Shown: one piece after another, positions 1,010-38,787 of the stretch
Numbering within the stretch: position 1 is the stretch's first letter
Layout of the letters: the number at the start of each line of letters is the position of its first letter
Assembly (NCBI GenBank): GCA_002269645.1
Contig: NIVC01001698.1
Span: 62,001 to 126,000, forward strand
Reading direction: 5' to 3'
DNA length: 64,000 nt
DNA from: Macrostomum lignano
Taxonomy: Eukaryota
Position numbers and translations under genes: made by a program
The notes under the pieces: model-generated
What the model was told of the DNA's origin: nothing
Database searches by the model: none
The model's input: the letters and a program-made list of their open reading frames with translations, nothing else

Positions 1010-5888
<4,879 letters not shown>

Positions 5889-15400: not shown

Positions 15401-18400
15401 TTGGGTGCAAGTCAATGTTACTGATCAGGCTCAGCCTGAGCTGCACAATTTACATTCCCCTCATAAAGTGACTCACCATGTTGATGATCATGACCACCTT
15501 GGGCCCCAGAGTCTGGCTCGGGTAGTAGAACTGCATGAACCGGATGAAGCACAGCGCCAGGGTCAACGCGTACGCATTGCGCACCCAGTCGAAGTTCTGA
15601 CAAGCCACAGTGAGGCGCAGCACGAGGCACAGCACGAACAGCGCAGAGATCACCATGTCGAACTTGTCCCAGTAGGACAGCTCGCCAACCTTCTTCACGA
15701 GCGGCTGCTGCTTGGAGAAGAACTGGCGGAACTCCTCCAGCACGTAGGTGAACGCCCACAGGAACATGTAGATTTCGATGCCGTGCGGCTGCGGGAAGCT
15801 GATGAAGGGCTCCACGTCACTCGGCGGGCTAATCGAGTAGGTCGAGTTTATTTTGCAACTCCGCTGAACGGGGTGCAGCTGCACCAGCACGATGTAGGAG
15901 TAGAAGATCAGGAAGGAGACGGTGCTGATCACGTTGAGGATGAATTTGCAGATCGGTGCGCTGTAGAACAACCCCAATGAGATGCAAAACGCCATCCTGC
16001 GGAGGCCGTGGCGCTGGTGGCGCATCTTTCTGAGTCGCATCTCGCGCCTGTTCTGCTTGTTGAAGTCCGAGATTACTTCCTCGACCTGGGATAGAGAGAT
16101 GAGGTAAGAGCTAAAACTAGAGTTAAGCCTACCTGTAGTTCTGATCTGATGGCACAAAGCAGTTGCACTTTGCCAAGACATTTTGTAGCTATTCGCTAGT
16201 TAAAACAGCAGAACTACCAACCAAGAGAGGAGGAAAAATCCCCCCCTGACAATTTCTTTGCTGCGCCGGAACGGAGCAACGCAGGCACACGAAATTTAAG
16301 AACACGGGCCAGCTTTTTGTTGCGCACCTTCTCAAACAACAATCAAGTCGCCAGCCCTCCGGACCGTCGAGATATTTGACGATTCTGCCAGAAGATCGGA
16401 TTTTTCCCATAAGCGCCAGTGTATTCAGTACACCCCTGTGCGCCAATCAGCACTGCGCCTCAGTGCAGCTTTTTCAAGTCTCCAAATTTCATCAGCACAT
16501 CGATCACGTGTGTCTGCATCAGCTCTAACTTTGTTGGTCACTAGCCTTCACTCAGGCGGAGCTTCTGCACCTTCAACAGGTGGCACTAGGTGCCTATGAA
16601 CACTCTGATACGAATTTCTCGAGTTTCGCTGATCAAGCCTGATCTGTTGAAGGTGCTGACGGCGTCCGGGTGATGACGGAATGCTTGAGAGAATAGCTGA
16701 GAATGTCCCACGGTTGAGCTTTGCCCATTGTCAAGGCTTGATCAGCGAAACTCGAGAAATTCGTATCAGAGTGTTCATAGTCACCTAGTGCCACCTGTTG
16801 AAGGTCCAGAAGCTCCGCCTGAGTGAAGGCTAGTGACCAACAAAGTTAGAGCTGATGCAGACACACGTGATCGATGTGCTGATGAAATTTGGAGACTTGA
16901 CAAAGCTGCACTGAGGCGCAGTGCTGATTGGCGCACAGGGGTGTACTGAATACATTTGCGCTTATGGGAAAAATCCGATCTTCTGGCAGAATCGTCGAAT
17001 ATCTCGACGGTCCGGAGGGCTGGCGACTTGATTGTTGTTTGAGAAGGTGCGCAACAAAAAGCTGGCCCGTGTTCTTAAATTTCGTGTGCCTGCGTTGCTC
17101 CGTTCCGGTGTAGCAAAGAAATTGTCTGGGGGGGGGGGAATTTTCCCCCTCTCTTGGTAGTTCGACGGGCGGAAAAATGCCTTGGTATTCCTACTGTTAA
17201 TTACCTGCAGATCCTCCATCGCTTCACGCGCATGAAAGCCGCGCATGTCCACAGCCTCCACTTCCTTCATTACAGATTTCACTTGCCGCTGCGTCTCCGG
17301 CTGGTCACCGGTGGAAATCTCCGGCTCGCCTTTGATCTGGTCGGCTGCGTGCTGGTGAAAGACGAGCACCGGAACGAGGAAGGGCAGGAAGAGGCAGAGG
17401 ATGATGCGCCAGTTGCTGGTGTCGGCCTCCATGCCTGCGGGATTGAAGAAACTTGAGTCAGTCGGCTCGGTGACACTCTCAACTTGGACACATCCTCAAC
17501 GCAGACATAATCAGCTCACTGCCAACTTACCGCCCATCCAGGTCTGTGTGAGCACAGTCTGCACAGGTGTCTGGTACAGCATGTCCATGCACTGGTTTGC
17601 CTCAGCGATAGCCATCACAGTCTGCTGGTTCCAGTAAGGCAGGCTGCGAATGAGCAGCAGTCTGCAGACAGCCCGGTTTTTGCTGCACTCTTCCAGCACG
17701 CCCACAGCCAGCTGTTCAAACCGGTGGGCATCGCGGGTCAGCTGATCTGTGGTCTCCATCTCGCCGCGCTTCGCTGCATCCATGGCCATGTTGTTGAGAA
17801 TGGAGTAGCCAATCAGAGCCGAGCCGATCTGGTCCTTGCCGTGCTTCCAGAACAGGACGGCCAGCTCCACGTTGTGAGTCAGCAGCGACCAGAGGAACAG
17901 GTCCTGCGAGGTGAAGCGGCGCTTGCCGTTCTTGGTGTAGGGCGGGAAAATCGTTTCGCGCAGCAGCGGCCGCGCCAGCGGGGAGGCGCCTTTCATCGGG
18001 TTTTCTTGCAGGTTCTCTGAGAGGAGTTTGCACGGTTTTACAGTATTGGGGTTTTTTATTAGAGGCAGGGGGCTGTGTGCACCCTGGCGCACTTTAAGCG
18101 ACATAGGCACACAACCGGCGAGAGGTATTGCTGCCCATTCCGCCGACTCCCCTGAGCAGGCATACAAGCGCGCGGATACGTACGCAGGCACACACTCACA
18201 CAGGAGTGTACAGTGGCCCTAACTTTATTTTATCGTTAGGCATGTACACTTCACTGCGCCTTGGGGGGTTGGCTCTCAAGGCCGTTAATTGCACGAGCAG
18301 AGCCAAGCCGAGATTGCAATTTAGACCCAAATTAATGTGACTGCACTTGGAATCGAGCCTGGGTCGCTGGCACACCAGAGCCTGCGCTAGACCGCTGGGC

Positions 18401-21400
18401 TACGGCCCCCCTCAGTGTTGGGGTTGGTGTGAGAGAGAGCGCCTGTCTGCCATGCTGAATGCACCTGAAGTGTCTACAGACTGAAGACACTCACCCGGAG
18501 TGTACAAATTGTCCACCGCATGCTCTGTGTACACCTTAATGAGCCAGTTGACGGCCTGCATGATGACCTGTGGGTCCGTCTCCTTGTTGAAGTTGTTCGA
18601 AGCGTCCCACACGTCCTGTGACGTCACGCTGCGAAAGGAGCAGCACTGAAAAAAGAAAGAGTATTTTTTCCCATATTTCACGAGAATTTTTTTACTTTAT
18701 AAGTTTGCTAGCTTAGACATAACCAACAAGAGCTTCGTTGCTGCAAGCTTACGGGAAGTTTGTCGAGTTTGTGCAACAGCCTGTCAGCCTGCTGGCTACC
18801 GGAGCGAAACATCTGCAATGCAAGTAAATACATGTATAGTCCTCTGTACTTCACGGCAGGGAGCTAGCCATAAAACTGGCTGTAACAGACTGGCTGTAAC
18901 ACACTGGCTGTAACACACTGGCTGTAACAATCTGGCTGTAACAAACTGACTGTAACACACTGGCTGTAACAAACTGGCTGTAACACACTGGCTGTAACAC
19001 ACTGGCTGTAACACTGGCTGTAACAAACTGGCTGTAACAATCTGGCTGTAACACACTGGCTGTAACACACTGGCTGTAACAATCTGGCTGTAACACACTG
19101 GCTGTAACACACTGGCTGTAACACACTGGCTGTAACAATTTGGCTGTAACACACTGGCTGTAACAATTTGGCTGTAACACACTGGCTGTTACACACTGGC
19201 TGTAACAATCTGGACTACTCAGCAAGCAACATCCCTGCCACAGCCTCAGTCAGCTACAAGTCAAAGCTCATAAGTTAAGCCATCATTCTTGGCCCACCTT
19301 GGCGTACAGGTCCGACAGAGTCTCCAGAGACAAAAACTTTGACAGGTCGATGCCGTGCTCGAGAAATAACTTCACAAAATCCACCTGCTGCTTGTTGAGC
19401 GCCTCCTTCATCGCGCGCTGCAGATTCATGCCAGTCCACTTGGACTTGCGAGCCTCGGCGAAAATTTCAGCTGCGGCGATGTCCGCCCGCTGCCAGGCCA
19501 TGCACAGCCGAACCTGCGGCAGTTCGAATCGGGGTTCAGGGACTGCTAGGGCGTGGGTCACGTGTGCGTGTTTCAACACCGGAACGAGCCGACTGCAATC
19601 TTAGTCAGCTTGCCGGACCATGCAGTGGATCAGAAATGCAGGCGCATGTCCGGTCCCTTTCGGCGCGAATTTGAATTTCATTTAGTTGAACAAAAGAAAC
19701 CGACATGTGCCGAAATGCCGAGACACCCAGTCCAGATCCCTCACCCTGGACTCCAAGGGGATTAATCAGAAGAAGGGGGCGATGCATGTGGCAGTCAAAC
19801 ACAGAATCTCTCAGGATTTAACCGAATCGAGTATTTTTATGATAAAATTTTGTTGCATACAGGTACTCGTAGCCATAAGCAAGGCCTTGGCTTAAGACTG
19901 ATAGCTTTCTAAAGACCAGGTCAACAACAATATGAAAAATAATGTTGGTAAACATTGTCTACATTTAATTACTTGATTACTTACCTGCTTAATCCAAGAA
20001 AGAAAAAAGCAAAATTTTCACTTCTGAGTTTTTACAATTTTGGCTTGGGCTTATGAAATAAAAGGAAAACAATATGAATATGAAACTTTCACTGCACAAC
20101 TGCATAAAAACAGAGTAACCTGTTGTGCATGCTAAATTAGAGGAATGCCAATCTTCACTGCCCCAGATCAAATGCAATCACTGGTTTTGTGATGAAAAAC
20201 TGTTTTCCTATCTCCACAGTGTATTTTTTTAGAAAACTGGCCTAAAAATTACACTATCTTTGAGTTTTATGTCCTGTAATACTACAGTGATCCTTGGTTG
20301 AGGTAGGGCGAGGGATAGGGCTAAGCTTTTCAGTATGAAGGTGACCGCTTTTTAGCATTGTGAAATTTCGGTTCTTCTTATCTCTCTATTCCTCTGCGAC
20401 CTTCTGATTGGCTCTTCATTCTTAACTCTCTCTCTCTCCTCGTACATCACCCGTGCCTTTCTGTCTGCACTTATCAGATAGTCCACACCCCCAATTTAGT
20501 GTATAAAATTTAGTGTACGTCAGTAGTTTAAATGGACTCACTGCAGGTTCCTTGTTAAATCTGGCCAGCTCTCACCTGAGTCATGGTGCTGTCTTTGTAG
20601 TCTTTGTGCTTGAAAAACGTATACAGAATGGTCTTGGCCATGTCCTCATCCAGCTCAGTATTGTACACTGACAGCATGTGGCAGTCAAACTTTGATTTCG
20701 GGTCTTCCTTGGAGAACTGCATCAGAACCTGTGTGAGGATTCGTTGAGACTCGCAAAGTCAAGCCACTGCCTGATCAGATGATAAATAACCCTCAACACT
20801 CGCACAGTCAAGCCACTGACTGATCAGATGATAAATAACCCCTCAACACTCGCACAGTCAAGCCACTGCCTGATCAGATGATAAATAACCCCTCAACACT
20901 CGCACAGTCAAGCCACTGACTGATCAGATGATAAATAACCCCTCAACACTCGCACAGTCAAGCCACTGACTGATCAGATGATAAATAACCCCTCAACACT
21001 CGCACAGTCAAGCCACTGACTGATCAGATGATAAATAACCCCTCAACACTCGCACAGTCAAGCCACTGCCTGATCAGATGATAAATAACCCCTCAACACT
21101 CGCACAGTCAAGCCACTGACTGATCAGATGATAAATAACCCCTCAACACTCGCACAGTCAAGCCACTGCCTGATCAGATGATAAATAACCCCTCAACACT
21201 CGCATAGTTAAGCCGCTGCCTGATCAGATGATAAATAACCCCTCAACACTCGCATAGTCAAGCCACTGCCTGATCAGATGATAAATAACCCCTCAACACT
21301 CGCACAGTCAGTTCAGCTCACGTGAGTGATTTCCTTTGCTTCAAGTTCGTTGCACTTCCACGTTGGCTGGTAGCGTTCAAGCATATCCTTGATTTTCTTC

Positions 21401-24400
21401 ATCACAAACTCATCGTCGGCTCGCGAGTGGAGATTGCGGATGTTGCGGAAGAAGGCGAGCTCATTAGCTGCCCGGCCGGAGCCCTGCACCGTGATCACCG
21501 GGGTGCCGGCCTCCGCGCTCTTGCCTGCGGGTTCGAGGCGGCAACTCAAATTTAGGAGACTGCGCGCAGTTGACAGCTCGCGCCATTGTGGCGCGTCTTG
21601 TCCAAAGCTCGTTTTTATTTGAGGGGCGCCATTTCATTTTAAGGATGCGCCATCTTATTTTAAGGGGGCGCCATTTCATTCTGAGGATGCGCCATTTCAT
21701 TTTGAGGGGGCGCCATTTCACTTTGAGGATGCGCCATTTCATTTTGAAGGGGCGCCATTTCACTTTGAAGATGCTCCATTTCATTTTGAGGGGGCGCCAT
21801 TTCATTTTGAGGATGCGCCATTTCATTTTGAGGATGCGCCATTTCATTTTGAGGATGCGCCATTTCATTTTGAGGATGCGCCATTTCATTTTGAGGATGC
21901 GCCATTTCAGTTTGAGGATGCGCCATTTCATTTTGAGGATGCGCCATTTCATTTTGAGGATGCGCCATTTCATTTTGAGGATGCGCCATTTCATTTTGAG
22001 GATGCGCCATTTCATTTTGAGGATGCGCAATTTCATTTTGAGGATGCGCCATTTCATTTTGAGGATGCGCAATTTCATTTTGAGGATGCGCCATTTCATT
22101 TTGAGGATGCGCCATTTCATTTTGAGGATGCGCCATTTCATTTTGAGGATGCGCCATTTCATTTTGAGGATGCGCCATTTCATTTTGAGGATGCGCCATT
22201 TCATTTTGAGGATGCGCCATTTCATTTTGAGGATGCGCCATTTCATTTTGAGGATGCGCCATTTCATTTTGAGGAAGGGCTTACCGGCCATCAGCACGGC
22301 CTTCTTTCCGCCCTCGATGACAAGCTGCACCACAGGCGGGTTGAAGGCGTTCTCCTTGTTTTTAACCAGCGACTTCAGCTTGTTGACAATGTACTGCTCA
22401 AAATCCGCCCTGAACTCCATCTCAGTGCCGAAATAGCGCACAGTGCCGTTGTCGCAGAAGATGAAGTGCGTGTGGTTCGGCTCGATAGCGGCCTGGCCGC
22501 GACCCGGATTCTCCGTGCAGTTCGCGTACTCGACAGTGTCGATTTGCTCCGCTTTGCTCTGCGGTGGGCGGGGGGATTTCCCGGGGTTGTGGAGCTATTT
22601 ATAGACTTCTTATTTAACTACTAATGGAAAATTCCGAGCGGCTGCATGCTGCTATTTTTACGAGCCAAAAAGGCTACAAAACCAAAAAGGCCGAAAAGTT
22701 GATATCGATCGCTCACTTCGAAGCCTTTAACAGTAGGGGGAATATCAAACCATTTTCCGCCCGTAGAACTAATCAAAAAGTAAAGACAGGCTGGGCCATA
22801 GACAACACGCAGATTTCCGCCCGAGACACTCGACTGAGAGCCAGCGTAACTCATGAGCAGCGACTTCAGTTCAGTCCAACAAGGATGTCCTGTCCCAGGC
22901 TGGCTTGTCTCTCAGGGGAAATCTGCGGGTTGTCTATGGCCAAACCGGTCTTCATTCTATAGGTTTGCAGTCTTGGATGTCCGTGTTCTACCATAACTGA
23001 GCATGGCAAATGCTATGATAATTTACCACAGGAATTACTCAACTGAACTTTAAAAAAAGAGTTGCAACAAACAAGCAAACATCTGAAAAAATCTGCTAAG
23101 CAGACAACAACAAAATCAAACGAATGCAAAGGTGATAAAATTAAGAGGATTCGGTGGAAGTTTCGGCATTGCGATCAAAAAAGTGCGTGACAAACTTTGC
23201 ATCCGAAGCACTATTGAACACTCGGGATAATTCCATGCTGCAACTTCTGTGCTACCGGGCAGGGAGACTGATGTCTAGAAAAGCAAATTTAATGATTGAA
23301 GAAGCACAACACATTGTGTACTGCTAGTGCCGAAATCATGCAGTGCTCATAATGGCTATTGAGGCTCTCAATTTATCATTCGTATGACTGCTTACTGTGC
23401 ATGAGTAGTATCTCGCGGTCTAAAAGCATGAGATTGTGGTCGAATGAGTCTGGCAATGGTAGATTGTGTCCATGGTGTTGGAGTTAAACCATAGACACTG
23501 CGAGCTACCTAATATTTACCATAAAAATGATTCATTCATTATCGTGACCATAATTAAGTGACCATTTTATTCATACGGCCTATTGTCTGAATAGAATTTC
23601 TTTTATGTCAATCCTATGGCACTGAATTTCATAGAACTTCATAGAAGTTCATAAAACTCAAAAGAATATCATAGGATTTCATACAATCGGACTCCTTATG
23701 TGAATACATTCGAATGTATGTTGCGATACATCCGTGTTTCTATGGCAACTATTAAATATGAGAAGAAATATGGCGTGTATGAATTTGTTTGGCCTGACTG
23801 GAAAGATGAATGCCATACTGTAGTGCTGATGGCGGCCAGAGTTTTTCCAACCTGCGCTGACGAAAGTGGATCATAAACTCTCTGAACAACTCCTATCCCT
23901 AACAAAGTGGTGCTCACATTCGTGCTGTCGATCTCCAGGCACTCCCGGTTATACACGGCACCCCAGGAGCAGAGGCCGATCACCCAGATCTGCTGTGCGC
24001 CGCCAGCAAAGTTGTACTCCTGGATGGCCTGGCCTACCAGTTGGCTGCAGCCCAGGTTGAAGCCGGGAGTCAGGATCCACGTGGCTGTGCGTGGGCGCAA
24101 GGGAACTCATGTATTCGTGAACAGAATCCACGTGGCTGTGCGTGGGCGCAAGGGAACTCATGTATTCGTGAACAGAATCCACGTGGCTGTGCGTGAGCGC
24201 AAGGGAACTCATGTATTCGTGAACAGGATCCACGTGGCTGTGCGTGGGCGCAAGGGAACTCATGTATTCGTGAACAGGATCCACGTGGCTGTGCGTGGGC
24301 GCAAGGGAACTCATGTATTCGTGAAGTCCTTGGCTTTACACCCACATGGGGTGCACAGCGGCTCTGATTTTCTCTTTGCGTATGTAAGGCCCTATGGGCG

Positions 24401-27400
24401 TGAGTTGCTACTCAGTTGACCAAAGTACTTAATATGACTTTAACTGCTCATGACGGTTGTAACTCACTCTTCACTCCGCTGGCCACATTGGTGAGTCCCT
24501 GTTTGACTTTTTTCAGCAACTTTGCCGACATTTTCTCCATCTTCTTGGCGCCCCCGTTGACGGACAGCACGAGATCGGGCAGCGGCAGGGCCCAGTACAT
24601 CGGGCTCGTCATCAGCTCCCAGAGCGCCTCGAAGTCTCGCGTTTCCGAGTCGATTCGAATGTACTGCCGATATGTATCGAAATTACTCATCAGTAAGCTG
24701 TAGGACACCACAGACACACCCACAAAGACACCACAGTCACACCCACAATGATACCACAGACACCCACAAAGACACCACAGTCACACCCACAATGATATCA
24801 CAGACACACCCACAAAGACACCACAGTCACACCCACAATGATATCACAGACACACCCACAATGATACGACAGGCACACCCACAAAGACACCACAGGCACA
24901 CTCACAAAGACACCACAGGCACACCCACAATGACACCACAGGCACACTCACAAAGACACCACAGGCACACCCACAATGACACCACAGGCACACCCACAAA
25001 GACACCACAGGCACACCCACAATGACACCACAGGCACACCCACAAAGACACCACAGGTACACCCACAATGACACCACAGGCACACCCACAAAGACACCAC
25101 AGGTACACCCACAATGACACCACAGACACACCCACAAAGACACCACAGGCACACCCACAATGACACCACAGGCACACCCACAAAGACACCACAGGCACAC
25201 CCACAAAGACACCACAGGCACATCCACAAAGACACCACAGGCACACCCACAATGACACCACAGGCACACCCACAAAGACACCACAGGCACACCCACAATG
25301 ACACCACAGGCACACCCACAAAGACACCACTTCACACACCCACCACTCGAAAGGAAACTACAGATGTAAAGAGATAATTAAGAAAAGAATAAAAGCTACG
25401 CTAATGCCGTCCCCTCACTGCTCAGCTCAACTCACAAACGGTTTGTGCGTCACTCCCAGCCTGCCGAATCCCTGCAGCTTCATCCGGCCAAAGGAGTTGG
25501 TCGGCAGCACCCGGGCGCAGGTCTCGGTGCGCCACTTCACCTTAGCCTGCTGCTCCGACTGCTGCACCGGGATGCCCTGCTCCCGGTGCCACTGGGGCGG
25601 CCGGTTGCAGTGGCAAATTGTCTCGCTGTGTTTTTGGGTTTTGAAAGGAGGAGGCAGTCTTAGCCACTCAAAATTCGATCTCGAGTTCAACTTCACTTGT
25701 TGGTGCTGGTGTTAGTCATCAATTGCAAGACTGATCACAGATTCACAGCAGCGGGCATCTGACCGCACACCTTTTCAAAATCAGATTAGCGAGCTAAGAT
25801 AACTACACAATTAAAGCCATGAACTCTTCGGTCGCTGCTATAGGCTTAAATGCTCCATTATTCTCTGTCGCTCAAAAAAGAAGCGAAACACAGGTTAAGC
25901 AGCCAGTCAGTGCACACACGAGGACCACTAGTAGGTACAACGGCAACTTCTAGTGGTCCTTGTACACACAATACTATTACGTATTTCTACATGTACGGAT
26001 AAGAGATAGCTTAATATTCTCAGGAGGGCTTTCGGGCCACCCTGACGCAACGCTTTCGAATTTGGAAAGGCAAAACCAACTGATGATGAGTAGTGACTAT
26101 AGGAATGTGTCCTGAGTTCGAATCTCACTTTTGGACGCAGACTGGACACACACGCACACACACGCACACACCTCGACCTCTGTTTCTATGACGTACCGCA
26201 ATTCTTAACTCAAGTATGTCTCTTCCCCTAGCTTTCCCAGAGTATACAGCAGCAGCTTTCTGTGTTGCTGTGCCGCCTCTCCGCTATTTAGCGGGCGGGG
26301 GTGCGGCTGAGTTCCCACGAGCACCAACTCGCAGCTCAATCTGCTGCAGATTGCTTTATTTACACAAGTCCCGTTGCAAAAAACGACCGCTCTAGCAGTA
26401 TTGTTAGCACGAAAATTTTGAGCTGGCTCCATGAAATATGACAGCAAAATCCACCCATGTTGTCCATGGGTGGACATACTGCTAGAGCCACACTAAACTG
26501 TCTCTGACCTTTCGACTCAAGCAATCGATTGATGGCGTACATGTGCGCTAGTGAAACTGATAGTAAATTTTGTACGTTTAATTGGTTATTGTAAATTGCG
26601 ACCGTTGGGCAGTTGTCACTGCAGGAAGTTGTCACTGCAGGAAATTGTCGTGGAACCAGCCATATCGCTAGCCTAAGATTCCCGAATACTCAAACGAAGG
26701 GTTAAGAAAAAAATCGTTTCGCGATTATTAAGCAACAGTTAATTTATTGGTTTTTTAAAAAGCGCCGCTCACCAGCCTGGAGGAGTCCTGAAAATCAGAG
26801 GTGCGAATCTAAAATGCGCGACTGTGTAGGCGGAGTCTGTCTACAGTGCATGAAAATCAGAGGTGTGATTCAGAACTGCGTGACTGTGCAGTCTACAGTG
26901 CAAGCAAACTCGTGCATTGTGACAAACGCTGTAAAATCACGAAGCCAGAGATGTACAGTTCAAGACAGAAGACAGAATATTCATGCCAGGATCCACGGAA
27001 TGAGAAATGAGATAAAGTTTGAAAAGCAGCGGACTCACTCAGCCGGGTTGGGTATGTACTGCTTGCAGAGCCGCATGCTGATGTTCTGCTTGGCAAAGTC
27101 GTGCAGCGTCTGTTGCGTCTGCTGGAGCTGCGGCTCGCCCTGCAGTGAAAGGTCGTCATCGTCCAGTTCGTCAATGTGCGCCAGGGACATTCACGAGAGT
27201 GAACTGGGGAGTGAACTGGGGAGTGAACTGGGTCTGTATTTCACGGGGTTCAAAATAGAAAGCAAAAAGCGAGGCGAAAAGTGGATCTTATCGACGCAAA
27301 ACCGGGGGGGGGGGTAAAGGGAAGGGCGAGGGCTTTGCAAAACTGCATTTTCCTCACTCTTCCCCTACCGTGTTCGTTCGCACCCATCCCTCTGACCCGT

Positions 27401-28748: not shown

Positions 28749-29045
28749 TTAGCTGACTGGTGCCGCTGAATGCGTCTGGAAAGAGGCGTGCGATGCCCAC
28801 TGCAGAGTCTTCTGAGACGTACGAGATAAATCATTGAAAAACAACTGATGACAAATCTTTTTATAGCAGTATTATTTCTTAAGCCAACGCTTAATTTATA
28901 AGCTTGCACCAATCAGGTGTGTTAACATTTTAAGAAACAAGAGACAATTTAAAACAAAATCTAACGAAACTGCATCGTGTCAATCAAGAGAAAGTACTAA
29001 TTTTTGGAATTTTTAGGAGGCAGTTTTTACCAACGAAGACATTAC

Positions 29046-29564
29046 AGGGGCCTATTTCATAAAACACTTGTCGGACAAATTACAAGTGACAAGTGACAAG
29101 TGAAGTACGAGAAAGAGATTTGACAAATTACAAGCGCTCCTTCGGGGGTTTCGTCCATAGACATGCGCTAAGCTGGATGCTTCTGTTGTGAAAATACTTC
29201 CTCTTGTCTTGTGTTTTTGACAAGTCGCTGTGACACTTGTAGCTTTATTAAAGCTGTGTATTCAAGTCCGAGAAGAACGCAGAGGCCGTCTTTAAAGCAA
29301 GTCTGTCCAAAACCAAGGAGTTCTATGATTAGCAAGGATGCTAATTATAGAACTCCTTGTCTAAAACACAGATCCTAAAATTGTGGTCTGTGGTCTAAAG
29401 GCTGGATCGATTTCATAAGGTGGTTCAACCATAGACACAAAAATGAGTTACTTTTAACCCTAGCAACGCGCGATGTTTATGAAACCAAAATCGTTGACGC
29501 TTGACACTTGTCACTTGTCGTTTGTCGACTTGTCACTTGTAGCTTTTTTATAAAATCGACCCCA
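29046..29564. mobile_element. Probable MITE upstream of TRPM
   Basis: Imperfect TIRs AGGGGCCTATTTCATAAAA / TTTTATAAAATCGACCCCA plus inverted ACAAGTGACAAG subterminal repeats; no TSD recognised. Confidence 0.45.
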
Positions 29565-29830
29565 GGTATTCATTTTTTCAGCACATATTTTCAGACCCAA
29601 TATTCATCTTTTGATAAGCTCGTATTACTTGTCTTTCTTAAAGCCCCATTGATCTTTTGTCTAGAAAATTAAGATTCTACGTTAATTTTATATCCTACGT
29701 ACACGTCCTGTGCCTAAAAATCATAAAAGTGGCACAGCCCGACTCAGGGGCGTCGCCATGGAATTTATGGTGGAACAAAGCCAAGAATTCTACATATAAA
29801 TTATTTTCAGAATCGGCATTTTTAGCGATC

Positions 29831-30570
29831 ATTTTGGCGCCGCAGGCACTCATTTTGGCGCCGCAGGCACTCATTTTGGCTCCGCAGGCACTCACTTATA
29901 GGCGCCGCAGGCACTCATTTTGGCGCCGCAGGCACTCACTTATAGGTGCCGCAGGCACTCATTTTGGCGCCGCAGGCACTCACTTATAGGTGCCGCAGGC
30001 ACTCATTTTGGCGCCGCAGGCACTCACTTATAGGTGCCGCAGGCACTCATTTTGGCTCCGCAGGCACTCACTTATAGGCGCCGCAGGCACTCATTTTGGC
30101 GCCGCAGGCACTCACTTATAGGTGCCGCAAGCACTCATTTTGGCGCCGCAGGCACTCACTTATAGGTGCCGCAGGCACTCATTTTGGCGCCGAAGCACTC
30201 ATTTTGGCGCCGCAGGCACTCATTTATAGGTGCCGCAGGCACTCATTTTGGCTCCGCAGGCACTCACTTATAAGTGCCGCAGGCACTCATTTTGGCGCCG
30301 CAGGCACTCACTTATAGGTGCCGCAGGCACTCATTTTGGCGCCGCAGGCACTCACTTATAGGTGCCGCAGGCACTCATTTTGGCGCCGCAGGCACTCATT
30401 TTGGCGCCGCAGGCACTCATTTATAGGTGCCGCAGGCACTCATTTTGGCGCCACAGGCACTCATTTTGGCGCCGCAGCTGCTCATTTATAGGTGCCGCAG
30501 GCGCTCATTTTGGCGCCACAGGCACTCATTTTGGCGCCGCAGCTGCTCATTTATAGGTGCCGCAGGCGCT
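29831..30570. repeat. Minisatellite with alternating 21/23-bp units (TTTTGGCGCCGCAGGCACTCA / CTTATAGGTGCCGCAGGCACTCA)
   Basis: Tandem copies upstream of TRPM. Confidence 0.93.
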
Positions 30571-33466
30571 ATGTTTTGTCGCCCTGAAGCAAAATTATTG
30601 ATTTCCATAACAGGGTCACAAAGGTGGGGTGGGGTTATAAAGCATTGACGTCCTCCATAACTTTTACTGGGGGGGACGCTTCCCCACTGTTTCCCCCTCC
30701 CGGTGGCAACGCCCTGGCTAATAATAAGTAATGATTTTATAGTCTTTACAATCAGTAGCGAGTCTTCATTAAAGTATAATAAAAGGCTTTAATTATATTA
30801 GTAGGTTAATTAGGTCGTATTTACGAAACAAGCCTAGCCTAAGTCAATATTGTTCATTTGTCTGATTGCTCGCAATATTGTAGTTAAAATCAGTTTTGTT
30901 ACACAGTCAATAAGCTAAGCACTCTAATAGTGATAAAAAGATTAATAAAACCAATGAGTCGAGTTCTGCCACTTATATGATTTTTAGGCTCAGGACTTGT
31001 ACCTGGGATATAAAATAGCATTCACTATACTAAAGATGAGCTGTCGGTATCCATCTAGGCAGGTATCATGTCCTTGATTTCAGAAAAGTAGAATCCTAAT
31101 TTTCTGAACGAAAAGCTCTACAAAAATCAACTGAGCTATAAGAAAGGCACAGCATATCAAAAGATAAACATTGGGTCTGCCTGCTATCAAAAGCAATTAC
31201 AATTTTTGTGCTGAAAAATGAAAAAAACGATTCTCCATAATAGATATTTTGGTAAACATACCACCTAAAAATTTTCAAGAAACAGTTTCCTATTCTTCTG
31301 CTTGAGTAGTCCTTGGTAAAAAACGTATACTTTCTCAAGGCATTTCCTAGCACGTTTTCTAAAGAAATAAAGATTAGATTAATAAAATATTACTAAAATA
31401 TCTAGTCATTTAAAATCGATGGTGGGTACAGTATTTTCATTTTTCAAAGACTTAAATAAATATGAATTGTTCGCATGATATGATTGTTAATCGATACACT
31501 TATGCCAATTGGATTGGCTGACTAAAACTGATCGTTTTGTCTAATTTGATATATAACATCTTACATATAAAATGGGTTGACAAACAATATCATTTGAATC
31601 TTGATTCTGCCGCATTTCCTCTAGTACTTTGAGTTTCAGAGCGTCAGTGTGTAGTGTAGCATATCATTGAACGTTTTTATATACGATTTAAAATTAATTT
31701 ATAGAAGCTTAGAATTATACGAATGAATATTCACGTAAAGTATGTCCCTGTTAAAGATGACACCGATGTAAATCAGAAGAATTTTTAAACAATTTGCATG
31801 GGTAGGAACTGTGTTTACAACTGTAACTTACGAGCGCTCGTATCATTTTGGGGCCGTTGTCAGATTCAAAATGATAGCTAAATTGTGCCTTGAAAGTAAC
31901 CGAGTAACCTACAATGCAAACACAGTTAGAATCATAAATATCGCTCTTTAAATAACCAAAAGAGACAAAACAGTGTTATCAAAGTAACATTTGCTGAAAG
32001 TTTTTCAACGGTGTGCGCACAATGTAAAAATCGTACTTTATTTTGTTAAAACTGAAAAATTTTAATTAAACCGTCAAATTTCGCTTCACCGGTTAGTATA
32101 AAGTTTGCGTCTTAATATTGCAGTATGACTTAGACTCCATTTTCATAGAGCTGATTTTGCTGGTTGCTTAGATGATTGAGTAAACAAATTAAGATATATT
32201 TTAGTATACATTGGTTAAAAATTCAAGTAACTGCCCTATTTATTCAGTTTGTTTAATATTTTAATGCTCCTTGGTAACTTTAATATTCATGCAAGTTCGG
32301 TTTGACTGTTAAAAAGTATATAGTGTTCATTTGCTTGTTTATAAACATTTAAAAACTCAGGCCTAGTGTATTTTTCCCAAATAAAACCTTTTTATCACAT
32401 GAATAGACAAAATTTGCATTTGAAACTTTAATGCACTTACTTCATTGCCAATTACTTGGTCACACTGCGATACTCAACTTATTGTCAAGTTGAGTAGCAC
32501 AACCCAACTATTCAACTCAACTCAACTGCTACTCAACTTATTGCCATTTGAATTTTTGTACTTCGTATGCTTACTTTAATATTTAATATTTCATATTAAT
32601 TGATATTTACAGTGGACCAAGTTTTGATCGATTCCCACTGATTCCCACACTGCTAAGTAAGTTATAAAGCAGTAAAAACAAAAAAAAATATACCAAAAAT
32701 TTTTGGTATGAACTGGGAACCGTTGGAAGTTAGCTGCGTTTCCGTCTCATCATCTGCTTCAGTGGCAAATCAGCAGAAAAACGCCTCCTTCCAGCGCCTT
32801 CTCGCTCTATAGTATAGTTCAAGCTCCGCGCCTCCGACCTGGACAAACTAGAGAGAATTTCACCGACGCCCTCCGTCGCATGCAATGCCTGTGTAGCATG
32901 AGACAGACTAGGCCTACGAGCTTAGGTCTGCGATCCTACACACCTGCACCCCCTCTATTCTGGTGCAGGAATGGCAGGAGAACTCTCTCCAAGCTGACTC
33001 GCAAGCCGACCCAGGGGTTCGCGCCCCGCATGTGTTCAAGGCAGCCCTAGGGCTGCTGGACTGACTGGGCTCCGGCGGCGGCAACCCATCCGTGGCCTTT
33101 GGCCAAGTTGGGTACGGGCTCCGCCCGGAAGTGAACCTGTGCGTATCAGGTACCTCTGGCCACGGCTCTGAGGAACAGGTACCACCCTCTGACTTTAACA
33201 GGGTATGCGGCCAGTCCGCAGGCTCCGGAGGCAGTCCTCCTGCTTCCCTCAAGGGCCCAGTGTAGTACCGTGCTGATGGTCATTTGGTTCGGCCTCTGGT
33301 TTCTCCAAGCCGGGCTCTTAGCTGGGGAGTTTCTCGGTTGCTAGCGGTCGGGCCGGTACGGGCTTAAGCCACCCCCCCGGTCGCTACCTCTTGGCCTGGC
33401 TGTTGGGTTTGGGGTTACGGCCCAGCGGCTTCTCACCTCTAGTCCCCACTCGCCTTTCAGCGACTC

Positions 33467-34936
33467 ATGGAGTATTCATTTACACCTAACACGTCCGAGG
33501 CTGCTGGAGCACCAACCGAGGTTGGCACCGCGGCCCAGCCGGACATTCGCAACACAGGAACCCCCGGTGCCTCTCAATCTGCCGCTGCCGCCGCTCAGGA
33601 TAATACCGGAGTGGCTGGACAAGACAGCGGACCTCAGATTTCGAAAAAGAAGGCCCGTAGCATTGCTCGCTTCAAAGCCTTTCTCCAGCGCAAAGCGGAG
33701 GAAAGGAGGAATGCGAAAGCCGCCCCTCCGGCCACCTCTGAGGAGGGTGCCGGTAACTCTGCGAACCCCGCGGAGGAGCCGACATCCGACAAGGGGGTGG
33801 ACCCCGCGCGCCGGTCTGATGCGTCAGGTGCCGCCGAAGCTCCTGGTGCGGCTGGCCCCTCCCGTGACCGGACCTCTGCCCGTGTGGAAGCTCCCACGGC
33901 CGTGGAGGGATCCAAAGCGGGGGGCGCTGGCCAAACCACAAAGCCGAAGCAAACCTACGCCGCTATGGCCAAGAGGCAGCCGGCCCTGGTTATCCAAGGC
34001 CAGGAGACGCCTCTTACGGCCGAACAGCTCGACCTTATCTGGCGCAGGTTGGACTCCCACCTGGTCAAGATGGCCTTGAGCGGCACTATCATTCGAGTCC
34101 AAAAGACGAAAGTCGAGGACCAAGCCCTCTATATCCAGCCCGCCGACAGCCAGTCAGGACAGCAGCTCCTCGAGCTGCTGAAAACCTTCGACTTGGGTAC
34201 GGAGCTGGAGAACCTGTTCATCTACAGGGAGGACGAGCGACCCCGGACACACCGGCACCGTGCCTGGATCCCGGCTCGCAGCTGCATCACCAAGGCCGAC
34301 GAGCTGCGTCACCTGCTAGTGGCTTCCAACCCGGAGCTACCGGCCAACGGTGTCGTAGTTCACGAGACCATCTCCAAGCCGGGCGGAGACGGTTTCACGG
34401 CTATTCTTGGACTGTCGGATAGCTGGATGCTCCGCCACCCGGACATATCCATCATCTCTGTCGGGCTGTTGCAGATTCAGCTCTTTAGCTTTGAGTCTGA
34501 CGCCACCCGCCCACCGCCCCCGGAGAAGCGTAAGCGGGCAGTCGGGGGCTCTGCCGGGCGGAAACGCCCAGGAAAAGAAGCTCCCGGCCGTCACGACCCC
34601 TCCGAGGACGTGGACCCTGTCAGAGGGAAAGCCGCGAAAGCTGCAGCAACAGGCGGACGTGGAAAGGGCCGGAAACCCGCCCGGAACACTATCCGCTCTG
34701 GTCTAACTCAGAGCGCGAAGCAGCTGCTGGACACCACCAAGGCCCCCAACCGCAGCCACCCCCAGCCCAGTGTCACCACTGCGGCTCCCCCGGAAAACCG
34801 GGCCGAGAGCGAGAATGCCGCCCAGGTAGCGACATCGCCCTCGACCATGGAATCCATCCGGGAGGAGCCCATGGAGCTGGAGCCTGAAGCTATCGGCGAG
34901 GCAGAAGAGGCAGCTCTCCTGCACAACTCGCCTTGA
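33467..34936 (+). CDS. LINE ORF1 (gag-like, 489 aa; central region resembles the DUF4780-type ORF1 of LOA elements)
   Basis: Intact ATG-TGA ORF directly upstream of the endonuclease. It has low-complexity termini and a folded core (AMAKRQPALVIQG...LLVASNPELP); no CCHC knuckle is seen. The domain assignment is from recall, not a search. Confidence 0.75.
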   Translation: MEYSFTPNTSEAAGAPTEVGTAAQPDIRNTGTPGASQSAAAAAQDNTGVAGQDSGPQISKKKARSIARFKAFLQRKAEERRNAKAAPPATSEEGAGNSANPAEEPTSDKGVDPARRSDASGAAEAPGAAGPSRDRTSARVEAPTAVEGSKAGGAGQTTKPKQTYAAMAKRQPALVIQGQETPLTAEQLDLIWRRLDSHLVKMALSGTIIRVQKTKVEDQALYIQPADSQSGQQLLELLKTFDLGTELENLFIYREDERPRTHRHRAWIPARSCITKADELRHLLVASNPELPANGVVVHETISKPGGDGFTAILGLSDSWMLRHPDISIISVGLLQIQLFSFESDATRPPPPEKRKRAVGGSAGRKRPGKEAPGRHDPSEDVDPVRGKAAKAAATGGRGKGRKPARNTIRSGLTQSAKQLLDTTKAPNRSHPQPSVTTAAPPENRAESENAAQVATSPSTMESIREEPMELEPEAIGEAEEAALLHNSP

Positions 34937-37900
34937 GCCGGCAGGAAGCTGAGCGGACCACTCGTGGAATCCCTGGAGTGGACATCCTGCAGCTAAACCT
35001 GCACCACTGCATCGCGGCCTCGACCAACCTGATGCGGGTGGCAAACTTTGCGAAACCGGGCATCATCCTACTCCAGGAGCCCTGGACAAATAAAGGTAAG
35101 ATTCCGAATATTCCTGCTGGTTTTGACTGTTTTCAGGACCCTCAAAACCCCAGAGCAGCCATGTTCGTGTCTACCCATCTCAAAGCTTGGCACAGACCGG
35201 ACCTCTCTGACAGAGACCTCTGTGTCATTCAGTCCAACCACATTATCACTAACCGCACGGTCATCATCGCCTCGATTTATATCCCTGGCGATGGCCCCGC
35301 GGTTCCACCCAACCTCACCTCCCTCGTGGACTACTGCTCTAACCGTAGGTTCGAGCTGCTGGTGGCGGGCGACATCAACGCTCACCACACCCACTGGGGC
35401 AGTAATATTTCCAATAGCAGAGGCGAGGAACTCCTTGCTTACATCTGCACCACCAACACTGAGTTTTGCAACATTGGTGGAACCCCCACCTTTGACAACG
35501 GGCGATGGACGGAGGCCCTCGACGTTACCCTCGTCTCCCATGGCTTGGCTCCTTTAGTCAAGGACTGGGAGGTGTGGGACGAAGAGGAGTCTCTGTCTGA
35601 CCATCGCTTCGTTCGTTTTCGTTTGCAATCCTCTTGCCCCAAGCCTCACATTCTGTGGAAAAGGAACGTCCGGAACACTGACTGGACGGCTTTCACGGAA
35701 ACCCTGAAATGCCAGACAGATCAGCTGACTACCGTCGCTCCAACCACCTGTCAGGAAGTGGATGACCTTGCAGACTTGCTCAGCAAGACCGTCCTGACAG
35801 CCCATGAGGCTTCCTGTCCTCTTAAAGCCTACAAAGGCAAAAATCCGCCCATTGGTGGCACCCGGCGCTCGGATCCCTCCGGCGCAAGGCAAAGTGCCTC
35901 CAACGGAAAGCTCGCAAGAGCAAGGACCCAGCTGACCTGGCCGCCTATCAAGAAGCGATCCGCGACTTTAAGCGTGAAACCAGGAAAGCCAAGTCCGACA
36001 AATGGCGTCAATACTGCGCGGAGTTAGAAGGCACCCGCCCTACTTCGCGCGTAGTTAAGGCTCTCACCCTCGACAAAATGTCAAAGCTCTCAGTCATTAA
36101 AATACCGGACGGCCGGCTCGCTGAGAACCCTGGGGAATCGCTGGACATTATGCTCACCAGCTCTTTCCCACGTGCCGCACCGCAGCTAGGCCCACCGGAC
36201 CACTCTCCGGGCGGACAGATTCTGGCTTCGACCATCATTACTAGAGAGAGGGCGGCTCGCGCCGCAAAATCCTTCTCTCCTTTCAAGTCCCCGGGTCCTG
36301 ACAACATTGATCCTGCCTTCCTTCATGAGGCAGTTAAAAATGACAGGTTTCTCGGCCTCCTCTGCAACCTCTTCAAGGCCAGCATTACCCTCGGGTATGT
36401 GCCAAAAGCCTGGCAAGAGGCTACGGTAGTCTTCATACCCAAGCCAGGAAAGGGAGACTATCACTCCGCCAAAGCTTACCGCCCTATCAGTCTGACGTCC
36501 TTCTTCCTCAAACTGATGGAACGGCTGGTGCTCTGGCGCCTTCTCCTCGTTGAGCTGAGGAACTCCCCGCTCTCCCCTAATCAGCACGTCTTCGTCCTGG
36601 ACGTTCCATCGAAAGTGCGCTGCACGCCATTGTCGACAAGCTGGAGCGCGCCGTGCTTGGCAGTGGATACGCGCTGTCGCTTTTCCTCGACATTGATGGT
36701 GATTTCAACAATGTGCTCTTTGAAGCCTTTAAGCGAGCCCTGGAATCCCGGGGCACGCACGAGCACCTCACCCGCTGGATCATGTACATGGTCTCCCATC
36801 GTACTGCCACCTCGCACCTCGTGGGACACTCACGCTCCGTGGAAGTCCAGAAGGGCGGACCGCAAGGTGGAGTCCTCAGCCCGATCCTCTGGAACTTAGT
36901 CATGGACGAACTGCTTTGCAGCCCGCATCCGACCCTGTTCAGAAGGTCGGCTACGCGGACGATGTTACCGCCACTGTGGCTGGACCATCGCCCGCGGTCC
37001 TCAGGGACCTCCTTCAATCCTTCATCCACCGTGCCGAGCGCTGGGCACATAGCTGCGGCCTCAGGTTCTCTGAGTCTAAAACTGTGGCTATCATGTTCAC
37101 CAGCCGCCGAAACTGGAGGATCGAACCGCTCTCCCTCTACGGCAAACCTGTTGCCATGGAGAAACAAACTAGATGTCTGGGCGTCACCCTCGACCACAGG
37201 TTGAGCTGGACCCCGCACGTCCAAACGAAAGCCCGCAAAGCTCTCGCGACTCTCGCGCAGATCCGCAGAGCTTTCGGTGCTACCTGGGGCCTCACCCCCC
37301 GCCGCCTCTGGTGGATTTACACTGCCATTGTTAGACCGGCCATCTCCTTCGCCGGCTTCATTTGGAACAGTGCCCTAGAGGTGAAAGGGGTTCTTGAGGT
37401 TTTAAATAGGGTGCAAGGCCGCGCTTGTCGAGCTATCATGAGCGCGGCTCCCTCTACGCCCTTCGCTGGCATGAACTCCTTCTTGGACATTCCCCCCTCA
37501 ACCTCTTTGTTAGAGGGGAGGCAATGAAAACCACCCGTCGTCTGCTTGACGCGGGTGTCCAAATCCAGAAGCAGTTTGCCTTCAGAAAGCGGAACCTCCG
37601 GCAGCATGGCGACCTCAGCCTGCGAGACCTGGAAGCAGCGAGAGGCCTGCTGACCCTCTCGGACGGAATCCCTTCCACGCTCTGCCCCCCGCTCAAATTC
37701 AAAACCAGCATTCCACCACGCCGTGAAGCGAGAGATAACTGGAAACCCCATGAAATCCACTGCTTCACTGACGGGTCCCAAATCAACTCCGCCTCTGGAT
37801 ACGGCTACTGCATCGTGTCTGGAGGGAGAACTGTGGCGACCTTCTCCCAACACACCGGCACCTGCTCCACCGTCTTCCAGAACGAAGTTCTCGCCATCAG

Positions 37901-38677
37901 CTCCTGCGCCATGGAGCTGTACAATCAGCGCGTCTGGGGGAAGGAAATTACCCTCCACTCGGACAGTCAAGCGGCGATTCACGCCCTTAAGCGCACCACC
38001 ACCAGCTCGCGTACAGTCCTCGACTGCATCGGGCAGCTCAACCGCTTAGGCGCCTCCAACAAGGTGTCCCTAAGGTGGATCCCCGGGCATTCGGGCCACC
38101 CCGGCAACGAGCTGGCCGATCGCCTGGCTAAGGTTGGCTCGACCGGTTCTTTTACTGGTCCCCTGCCCGTGGCCCCCACCCCCATCGCTGTTGTCACCAC
38201 TCGGATCAACCAGTGGGTGGCTTCTAAGCACAGGGAGAGGTGGGCTAACGCCCCGACTGCCGGCAATCCCGCGCGGCTGTCCCCTGTCCCTCCCCCGCCC
38301 TTCGCAGGGCCCTGCTTGGACTCAACCGCAGGGACATCAGGGCGGTTACCATGGCCCTCTCGGGTCATGGCTGCTTTGCCAGGCATCGTTACCTCCAGGA
38401 GAAAATCCGCAGTGAGGAATGCCCTTTCTGCCTCTCCGGTGTCGAGAATGCGGAGCACTTCGTCTGTGAATGCCCCGCCTTTACTCAGGACAGGCTCACC
38501 TACCTCGGCCCAAACCTGGACCTCTCCGACGTTTTCAGGCCCGAGAATCTCTGCCAGCTCGTCCGCTACCTAAGGGCTACCGGGCGAGCGACAATCCACC
38601 TCCTGGACTCTCCGGAGGGGGACCGCGCTGCGGACGCCGGCGCCACCGGAACTCCCTGCGCGACACCGCAGCACTAG
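34933..38677 (+). pseudogene. LINE ORF2 (APE endonuclease, reverse transcriptase, RNase H, C-terminal zinc finger), split by five -1 frameshifts
   Basis: APE: LQLNLHH, LLQEPW, AGDINAHH, LSDH. RT: KSPGPDNI, YRPISLTS, FLDIDGDF, PQGGVLSPILW, GYADD. RNase H: [34 protein letters not shown]. Zinc finger: CPFC...EHFVCEC. Frameshifts near 35850, 36593, 36929, 37495 and 38252. Confidence 0.9.
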
Positions 38678-38787
38678 CTGCCCGTGGTCGCCAGGGGTTA
38701 GCGAAATGGGCGGCAACGCCTCCTCGCTGTTTCCGGACGCGCGGAGCCCCCTGCAGCTAAGTCAAGTAAGTCAAGACGCCCTCCGTC

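What the first reader, a model, noticed from the sequence alone, without database searches (positions are those of the whole stretch)
18052..38774. Candidate LINE-SINE partnership: the tRNA-SINE 3' end matches the 3' UTR of the LOA/R1-like LINE, with a covarying stem-loop
Seen: the SINE sense 3' end (minus strand, about 18156 to 18052; same in the 7913 copy) reads CAGGGG..GCGGAATGGGCAGCAATACCTC-TCGCC...AGCCCCCTGCCTCTAA. The LINE 3' UTR (38692-38760) reads CAGGGG..GCGAAATGGGCGGCAACGCCTCCTCGCT...AGCCCCCTGCAGCTAA. The blocks are 18/22 and 14/16 identical, colinear, and both directly precede the tail. Both can fold a hairpin capped by GCAA, with outer stem AGCGA/TCGCT in the LINE and GGCGG/TCGCC in the SINE (compensatory A-U to G-C, plus a G-U pair). 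TSD lengths are similar (11-13 bp). Established: stringent LINEs recognise a 3' stem-loop and partner SINEs borrow it; well-known partners are L2, CR1 and RTE. Inference: this may be an undescribed SINE family mobilised by an RNase H-bearing LOA/R1-type LINE. The divergence suggests a relative of this copy is the true partner.
Basis: partly seen in the sequence, partly recalled or inferred. Interest (0 to 1): 0.75.

Follow-up and report, generated by a model that had tools for sequence, protein, structure and literature searches.

The report
Flatworm SINE borrows its LINE's tail
A short non-coding mobile element in this flatworm-like genome ends in the same folded RNA signal as a nearby full-length LINE retrotransposon, so it most likely hijacks that LINE clade's copying enzyme; this is a real example of a relationship already known in other animals.

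Summary
Two 97%-identical SINE copies lie on the minus strand (18412-18052 and 8261-7912). One full-length LINE (32878-38774) encodes ORF1 and an endonuclease, reverse transcriptase and RNase H.

The quoted blocks are exactly 18/22 and 14/16 identical and sit just before each tail. A covariance model built only from LINE 3' UTRs of other contigs found three hits in the whole window:
- the LINE 3' UTR (60.5 bits)
- the two SINE tails (21.5 bits each, E 0.007)
- the next hit scored 10.7 bits

The shared element is larger than one hairpin. It is a Y-shaped module: closing helix CAGGGG/CCCCUG, hairpin A with an AAU/UC(C) internal loop, then a variable hairpin B. Covariation in eight LINE relatives supports it, and three more distant relatives fold to a similar junction. 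The SINE keeps 28 of the 29 LINE-conserved columns.

The partner-LINE reading is supported, but three points are not:
- The LOA/R1 label is untested, and ORF1 has no zinc knuckles.
- The terminal repeats differ, which fits a related family as the true partner.
- The tRNA origin of the head is unverified.

SINE partnerships with I-superfamily LINEs are already published, so this is a new member of a known kind.

The parts
18052..18412 (-). SINE copy A, full length (361 nt): head with A-box-like and B-box-like motifs, body, 3' module, tail CTAATAAAAAA
   Evidence: It is flanked by an 11-bp TSD, CCCCAA(C/T)ACTG, at 18423-18413 and 18051-18041.
18392..18402 (-). A-box-like motif TAGCCCAGCGG (consensus TRGCNNAGTGG, one mismatch)
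   Evidence: Read. The consensus is from established knowledge. ARAGORN and Rfam do not recognise a tRNA here.
18349..18359 (-). B-box-like motif GGCTCGATTCC (consensus GGTTCGANNCC, one mismatch), 32 nt after the A box
   Evidence: Read.
18066..18154 (-). SINE 3' module. P1 is CAGGGG (18154-18149) with CCCCTG (18071-18066). Hairpin A is GGCGG-AAT-G-GGCA-GCAA-TACC-TC-TCGCC (18144-18117). Hairpin B is TGTGTGC...GCACACA.
   Evidence: R1 scored it 23.3 bits and R2 21.5 bits. The minimum-energy fold equals the centroid and gives the Y shape. It forms 14 of 15 standard pairs in alignment A6.
7912..8261 (-). SINE copy B, 5'-truncated by about 14 nt, 96.9% identical to copy A. Its 3' module includes the model hit at 8022-7976.
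   Evidence: The TSD TTAGGCCTCG lies at 8271-8262 and 7911-7902.
32878..38774 (+). Full-length LINE (about 5.9 kb) with a perfect 13-bp TSD GACGCCCTCCGTC at 32865-32877 and 38775-38787
33467..34936 (+). LINE ORF1, 489 aa, intact, with no Pfam hit and no CCHC knuckle
34933..38677 (+). LINE ORF2 with endonuclease, reverse transcriptase, RNase H and a C-terminal CCHC motif. Five frameshifts interrupt it, but no in-frame stop codon does.
   Evidence: It is 74% identical to the intact protein P0001.
38692..38753 (+). LINE 3' UTR module. P1 is CAGGGG (38692-38697) with CCCCTG (38748-38753). Hairpin A (38700-38728) is AGCGA-AAT-G-GGCG-GCAA-CGCC-TCC-TCGCT. Hairpin B is 38729-38747.
   Evidence: R2 was built without this sequence and scored it 60.5 bits.
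38758..38775 (+). LINE tail, two units of TAAGTCAAG. The last G is shared with the TSD.
   Evidence: The same tail is present in L085 and L096, and variants occur in L001, L084, L086 and L002.

Best explanation
The SINE is a non-autonomous retroposon. Its last 100 nt or so copy the 3' UTR recognition module of an RNase H-bearing I-superfamily LINE clade, which is represented in this window by the element at 32878-38774.

The module is a Y-shaped RNA placed just before the tail. It has three parts:
- a closing helix with conserved sequence, CAGGGG/CCCCUG;
- hairpin A, whose stems covary while its internal loop (AAU-G on one side, UC(C) on the other) is conserved;
- a hairpin B that varies in sequence.

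Inferred mechanism: the LINE ORF2 protein binds this module on its own RNA and starts target-primed reverse transcription at the tail. A SINE transcript carrying the same module is accepted in trans. This would produce the 10-13 bp target-site duplications and the 5' truncation seen here.

The actual driver is most likely a close relative of the window copy that ends in a TAA/A-rich tail, rather than this exact family.

Shown: the homology, the structure and the covariation. Inferred: binding and mobilisation.
For: **The match is real**
- Models built from LINEs only find the SINE tails as the only other significant hits in 128 kb of both strands.
- The untrained LINE relatives L084, L085, L086, L096 and L005 are also found, each directly after or at the ORF2 end.

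**The structure is supported**
- In eight LINEs, 94.2% of cells pair, against 44-66% when partners are slid.
- Six pairs change on both sides, and no shuffle out of 500 reached the observed values.
- With the SINEs added, pairing is 93.3%.

**The SINE keeps what the LINEs keep**
- It keeps 28 of 29 LINE-conserved columns but only 13 of 27 variable ones.
- It has its own double changes that preserve pairing: A-U to G-C in P2, and G-C to A-U in P3.

**Folding agrees**
- Independent minimum-energy folds give the same Y shape for both SINE copies and for L001, L084, L002, L003 and L005.
- The distant relatives L010 and L022, and L011 in its centroid fold, also give three-way junctions.

**Divergence and age fit a partnership**
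- SINE against window LINE is 78% identical in the module core. LINE against LINE ranges from 43% to 86%.
- Published SINE-LINE tail pairs span 72-95% identity (PMC11481361).
- Both families look young: the SINE copies are 97% alike, and the LINE has a perfect 13-bp TSD.
- Copy B is 5'-truncated.
- No other LINE was detected in the window.
Against: - The terminal repeats differ: (TAAGTCAAG)2 in the LINE and CTAATAAAAAA in the SINE. Well-characterised pairs usually share them.
- One SINE pair in P3 is a C-A mismatch.
- Only two SINE copies were available, so there is no family consensus.
- The genome could not be scanned for a LINE that matches better.
- Alignments A6 and A8 were made by hand to fit the structure, with hairpin B cut out, so the pair counts lean towards that structure.
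- Folding energies are not significant against shuffles (z from +0.2 to -1.9).
- This LINE copy has five frameshifts.
- No experiment shows mobilisation.
Confidence: 0.78

Rival explanations
1. The tail is a relic. The SINE tail came from this LINE clade by template switching, but the SINE is now mobilised by a different LINE with relaxed recognition, which reads its A-rich end.
For: - The SINE ends in TAATAAAAAA, not in the LINE repeat.
- P3 carries one mismatch.
Against: - The SINE keeps 28 of 29 LINE-invariant columns and has compensatory changes that preserve pairing. This would not be expected without continued constraint.
- The related LINE L003 itself ends in poly(A) after the same module, so an A-rich end is compatible with this clade.
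- No other LINE was found in the window.
Confidence: 0.12
2. The similarity is chance between two GC-rich sequences.
For: - Single blastn segments are weak (E 0.79 and 2.7).
- Folding z-scores are not significant.
Against: - Models built without either the SINE or the window LINE pick out both SINE tails (E 0.007). The gap to the next hit is 11 bits.
- The second block, CCCCTGC..CTAA, is colinear and sits at the very 3' end.
- Only 2 of 2000 shuffles reached the local alignment score.
- 28 of 29 conserved columns are kept.
Confidence: 0.03
3. The short element is an internally deleted derivative of the LINE, not a SINE driven by RNA polymerase III.
For: The head is not recognised as a tRNA by ARAGORN or Rfam.
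Against: - Only the last 100 nt or so resemble the LINE. The rest of the SINE has no match to the LINE 5' UTR or ORFs.
- The head carries A-box-like and B-box-like motifs, each with one mismatch, at +10 and +53 with 32-nt spacing.
Confidence: 0.05

Closest known systems
Stringent-type LINE/SINE pairs that share a 3' stem-loop, such as UnaL2/UnaSINE1 in eel and the zebrafish L2 LINEs (PMC4176376; review PMC3747384)
   Same: - The SINE 3' end is homologous to the partner LINE's 3' UTR.
- A conserved stem-loop with compensatory changes lies just before the tail.
- TSDs and 5' truncation are present.
   Different: - The LINE here is not L2, CR1 or RTE. It carries RNase H and belongs to the I superfamily.
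- The shared element is a three-helix junction rather than a single hairpin.
- The terminal repeats are not identical.
Gecko SINE of Aedes aegypti with I-clade MosquI / I-74_AAe tails (listed in PMC3747384, Table 1)
   Same: A SINE listed as tRNA-promoted is paired with an I-clade LINE. By its title, the original paper (reference 132 of the review) is about changing tails, that is tandem repeats against poly(dA).
   Different: - The host phylum differs, and no sequence comparison was possible.
- The Gecko paper could not be opened here.
Bivalve V and Meta SINEs with tails from Nimb LINEs (PMC11481361)
   Same: - The hosts are lophotrochozoans.
- An I-superfamily LINE acts as RT donor.
- Tail homology covers 35-61 bp at 72-95% identity, which matches the values here.
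   Different: - Whether this LINE is Nimb is untested.
- No conserved central SINE domain could be checked.
- That paper does not describe the Y-shaped structure seen here.
SART1 and R1Bm, R1-clade LINEs whose 3' UTR is needed for retrotransposition (PMC3747384, text)
   Same: - The 3' UTR is recognised in a stringent way.
- The endonuclease here is most similar to that of TRAS1, another R1-clade element.
   Different: - R1-clade elements are typically site-specific and have CCHC knuckles in ORF1 (from my own knowledge).
- This LINE inserts at unrelated sites and has no ORF1 knuckles.

Membership tests
SINE (tRNA-type, RNA polymerase III promoter) | Internal A and B boxes at the 5' end with tRNA-like spacing | tested here: met
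   TAGCCCAGCGG lies at +10 and GGCTCGATTCC at +53. Each has one mismatch to the consensus, and they are 32 nt apart. The consensus comes from established knowledge.
SINE (tRNA-type, RNA polymerase III promoter) | Recognisable homology of the head to a tRNA | tested here: not met
   ARAGORN found no tRNA. Rfam gave no tRNA hit even at E up to 10 on 121 nt. The head may be too diverged, and a family consensus is needed.
SINE (tRNA-type, RNA polymerase III promoter) | Short, non-coding, multi-copy, flanked by TSDs | tested here: met
   There are two copies of 350-361 nt, 96.9% identical, each with a 10-11 bp TSD.
Stringent LINE/SINE partnership | Colinear sequence homology between the extreme 3' ends of SINE and LINE | tested here: met
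   (18/22 and 14/16 identical; R2 gives 21.5 bits, E 0.007).
Stringent LINE/SINE partnership | A conserved 3' stem-loop kept by compensatory changes | tested here: met
   93-94% of cells pair, six pairs change on both sides, and no shuffle out of 500 reaches this. The alignment was hand-made, so this is a caveat.
Stringent LINE/SINE partnership | The same terminal repeat at the 3' end | tested here: not met
   The LINE ends in (TAAGTCAAG)2 and the SINE in CTAATAAAAAA. Only CTAA is shared. The related LINE L003 ends in poly(A).
Stringent LINE/SINE partnership | The LINE protein mobilises the SINE in trans | not testable with these tools
   This needs a retrotransposition assay.
LOA/R1-clade LINE | The RT domain groups with LOA or R1 reference sequences in a phylogeny | not testable with these tools
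   No Repbase or RTclass1 references were available, and the database hits are unnamed.
LOA/R1-clade LINE | AP endonuclease, RT and (for LOA) RNase H domains | tested here: met
   Pfam finds Exo_endo_phos_2, RVT_1 and RNase_H. The best PDB match to the endonuclease is TRAS1 (1wdu, E 1.5e-13). These domains are also shared by the I, Nimb, Ingi and Tad1 clades.
LOA/R1-clade LINE | ORF1 with CCHC zinc knuckles (the typical I/LOA/R1/Jockey type, from my own knowledge) | tested here: not met
   No CCHC motif occurs in ORF1 of the window LINE, L001, L002 or L003. The window ORF1 has a single cysteine.
LOA/R1-clade LINE | Site-specific insertion (many R1-clade elements) | tested here: not met
   The 3' flanks of the window LINE, L001, L084, L085, L086 and L096 are unrelated.

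The most novel reading that the evidence does not exclude
The Y-shaped 3' module is an old RNA element found across the whole clade, and the reverse transcriptase recognises it. It consists of the closing helix CAGGGG/CCCCUG, a hairpin with a conserved AAU/UC internal loop, and a variable second hairpin. It persists in LINE relatives that are only 27-45% identical in protein and come from unrelated samples. This flatworm SINE is a natural mimic of it. If true, it would be a clear structural definition of what an RNase H-bearing I-superfamily LINE reads on its template. No Rfam family matches it.
Probability: 0.4. Interest if true: 0.55.

Novelty: new member of a known kind. Interest (0 to 1): 0.4.

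Why it matters
- It gives a concrete SINE-LINE pair for a macrostomid flatworm. I found no description of one in the searchable literature.
- It defines, with covariation, which parts of the LINE 3' UTR are constrained: the closing helix, the internal loop and the G-GGC stem start. These are testable contact points for the reverse transcriptase.
- Macrostomum lignano is, to my knowledge, a transgenesis-capable model, so template recognition by a stringent LINE could be studied in it.
- Beyond that, the result is an expected instance of a well-known relationship.

Tried and rejected
- **Window ORF1 look-up:** an exact-protein look-up found nothing.
- **P0003, the 55% relative:** no DNA was available.
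- **MAFFT on the raw 3' UTRs:** it misaligned the stems, so I used N-padded hand alignments.
- **IMG/VR scans:** a module pattern gave 8 hits, none of which passed model R2. An exact SINE 20-mer gave no hit.
- **Third protein search:** I used it on the TRPM-like exon to confirm the species, with too strict a threshold. It returned nothing, so the host is known only from LINE fragments 87-97% identical to pieces of Macrostomum lignano gene models.
- **ORF inside the SINE:** a look-up meant to fish out more SINE copies found nothing.
- **Sequence strings in papers:** the search returned only unrelated primers.
- **Supplement of PMC11481361:** it is not held.
- **Gecko SINE paper:** it is not held.
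- **The hit at 58112-58150:** rejected as a chance match inside an acetyl-CoA carboxylase exon.
- **Clade placement of the RT:** this could not be done with the tools on hand.


Full report
**1. What is in the window**

Two copies of a 350-361 nt element lie on the minus strand.
- Copy A spans 18412-18052. It is flanked by an 11-bp TSD, CCCCAA(C/T)ACTG.
- Copy B spans 8261-7912. It is flanked by TTAGGCCTCG and lacks about 14 nt at its 5' end.
- The copies are 96.9% identical.

The head carries an A-box-like motif (TAGCCCAGCGG) and a B-box-like motif (GGCTCGATTCC), 32 nt apart. Neither ARAGORN nor the Rfam tRNA model recognises a tRNA. 'tRNA-derived' is therefore plausible but unverified.

On the plus strand, 32878-38774 is a full-length LINE with a perfect 13-bp TSD. 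Its parts are:
- a 589-nt 5' UTR;
- an intact ORF1 of 489 aa;
- an ORF2 with AP endonuclease, reverse transcriptase, RNase H and a C-terminal CCHC motif.

Five frameshifts interrupt ORF2, but no in-frame stop does. The 3' UTR is 38678-38774 and ends in two units of TAAGTCAAG.

No other LINE was detected in the window. The host genes seen are acetyl-CoA carboxylase, a TRPM-like channel, an ALO-domain protein and a GPCR.

**2. Source organism**

Fragments of this LINE are 87-97% identical to pieces embedded in Macrostomum lignano gene models. The window therefore comes from that flatworm or a very close relative. A host-gene check failed because I set too strict a threshold.

**3. Is the similarity real?**

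The quoted blocks are exact, 18/22 and 14/16 identical. Three tests show the match is not chance.
- The local alignment scored 28, against 15.8 +/- 2.3 for dinucleotide shuffles. Only 2 of 2000 shuffles reached it.
- In a whole-window blastn of the SINE tail, the best non-self hit and a colinear joint third-best hit both lie in the LINE 3' UTR.
- The cleanest test uses covariance models that never saw the SINE.
  - R1 was built from four LINE 3' UTRs. It scored both SINE tails at 23.3 bits (E 5e-4). The next hit scored 12.9 bits, in a carboxylase exon.
  - R2 was built only from six LINE UTRs of other contigs and was run with filters off. It gave the window LINE 60.5 bits, the SINE tails 21.5 bits (E 0.007) and the next hit 10.7 bits.
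  - The E-values are rough because calibration was shortened.

**4. What the shared element is**

I fetched LINE relatives through protein searches.

| Locus | Protein identity to the window LINE |
|---|---|
| L001 | 74% |
| L084, L085, L086, L096 | 58-66% |
| L002 | 45% |
| L003 | 42% |
| L005, L010, L011, L022 | 27-35% |

All close relatives share one layout just before the tail:
- CAGGGG;
- hairpin A, made of a 5-bp outer stem, an AAU bulge, a G, a 4-bp inner stem, a loop, a UC(C) bulge, and the return strand of the outer stem;
- hairpin B, which varies in sequence;
- CCCCUGC;
- about two bases, then the tail, which starts TAAG in most relatives. L003 ends in poly(A) instead.

CAGGGG and CCCCUG are complementary and close the whole module into a three-way junction.

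Independent minimum-energy folds return this Y shape for both SINE copies and for L001, L084, L002, L003 and L005. Three-way junctions also come out for the distant relatives L010 and L022, and for L011 in its centroid fold. Folding energies alone are not significant (z from +0.2 to -1.9).

**5. Covariation**

I used a hand-made, N-padded alignment with hairpin B removed. Each row was checked against the real sequence.

| Alignment | Cells paired | Paired when partners are slid | Pairs changed on both sides | Shuffles reaching the observed values |
|---|---|---|---|---|
| Eight LINEs | 94.2% | 44-66% | 6 (4 of 5 in the outer stem, 2 of 4 in the inner stem) | 0 of 500 |
| LINEs plus both SINEs | 93.3% | 44-65% | 6 | 0 of 500 |

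- The closing helix is conserved in sequence and shows only G-U changes.
- The SINE forms 14 of 15 pairs. It has its own double changes, A-U to G-C in the outer stem and G-C to A-U in the inner stem. It also has one G-U pair and one C-A mismatch.
- The alignment was fitted to the structure and the sample is small, so these counts lean towards the structure.

**6. The conservation pattern**

The SINE matches 28 of the 29 columns that are conserved in at least seven of the eight LINEs. It matches the majority in only 13 of the 27 variable columns.

Its module core is 78% identical to the window LINE, which is the closest sampled, and 72% identical to L003. LINE-to-LINE values range from 43% to 86%. 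By this measure the SINE tail is an ordinary member of this family of 3' modules. The GCAA loop is shared only with the window LINE, which points to a source near that family.

**7. Mechanism**

The most likely reading is the standard stringent model. The LINE reverse transcriptase recognises the module on its own RNA and primes on the tail. The SINE transcript presents the same module and is copied in trans. This fits the 10-13 bp TSDs, the 5' truncation of copy B and the young age of both families.

Binding and mobilisation are inferred, not shown.

The tails differ: (TAAGTCAAG)2 in the LINE and CTAATAAAAAA in the SINE. The true driver is therefore probably a sister family. The relative L003 shows that the clade includes members ending in poly(A).

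**8. Comparison with what is known**

SINEs that share 3' ends with partner LINEs are well established (PMC3747384, PMC4176376). Partners from the I superfamily are already listed:
- Gecko with MosquI in Aedes, Mg-SINE with Tad1, and an Anolis SINE with Vingi (PMC3747384, Table 1);
- Nimb LINEs with bivalve V and Meta SINEs (PMC11481361).

The kind is therefore known.

'LOA/R1' membership could not be tested.
- The endonuclease is closest to the R1-clade TRAS1 endonuclease among solved structures.
- ORF1 lacks CCHC knuckles, and insertions are not site-specific.
- I call the element only an RNase H-bearing I-superfamily LINE.

Rfam has no family for the module. I found no paper on Macrostomum SINEs. 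Repbase and Dfam could not be consulted.

**9. Verdict**

The partnership reading is supported, with these corrections:
- the clade is unverified;
- the tRNA origin of the head is unverified;
- the shared element is a three-helix junction;
- a relative of this LINE copy is the likely driver.

This is a new member of a known kind and of moderate interest. The most novel part is the clade-wide structured 3' module.

Noticed in passing
window 34933-38677: The LINE ORF2 has five frameshifts but no in-frame stop codon, while ORF1 is intact and the 13-bp TSD is perfect. This could mean indel errors in the assembly rather than decay.
   Followed up: partly
window 17511-18051 (-): SINE copy A ends about 35 nt upstream of an exon-like ORF with a TRPM2-like domain, in the same orientation and just before a possible splice acceptor (ctctcag). 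It may affect splicing of that gene.
   Followed up: no
window 3660-4100, 21840-22265, 24870-25315, 28265-28600, 54040-54300: Several long minisatellite arrays, with periods of about 39, 21, 23, 61 and 22 bp, appeared as periodic hits in the blastn output.
   Followed up: no
window 33467-34936; L001 548-2125: ORF1 of this LINE clade has no zinc knuckle and no Pfam domain. It does share a conserved central block (RVWVPA...GFTAILGLSDSWM...) with relatives, which could be an undescribed RNA-binding fold.
   Followed up: partly
L005 6003-6100; L010, L011, L022 3' UTRs: Distant LINE relatives from unrelated metagenomes end in different microsatellite tails: (AAGAG)n, (ATTCT)n, (GAA)n and (AACTGG)n. 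A three-way junction still comes out of their folds just before the tail, in the centroid fold for L011.
   Followed up: partly
window 8255-8275 (-): At the 5' junction of the truncated SINE copy B, the target sequence (GGCCTCG) resembles the missing SINE 5' end (GGGCCGTAG). This suggests joining by microhomology.
   Followed up: no
L001 843-890 (-): A weak hit of model R1 (16.1 bits, E 0.17) lies antisense within ORF1 of the L001 LINE. It is probably chance in GC-rich sequence.
   Followed up: no
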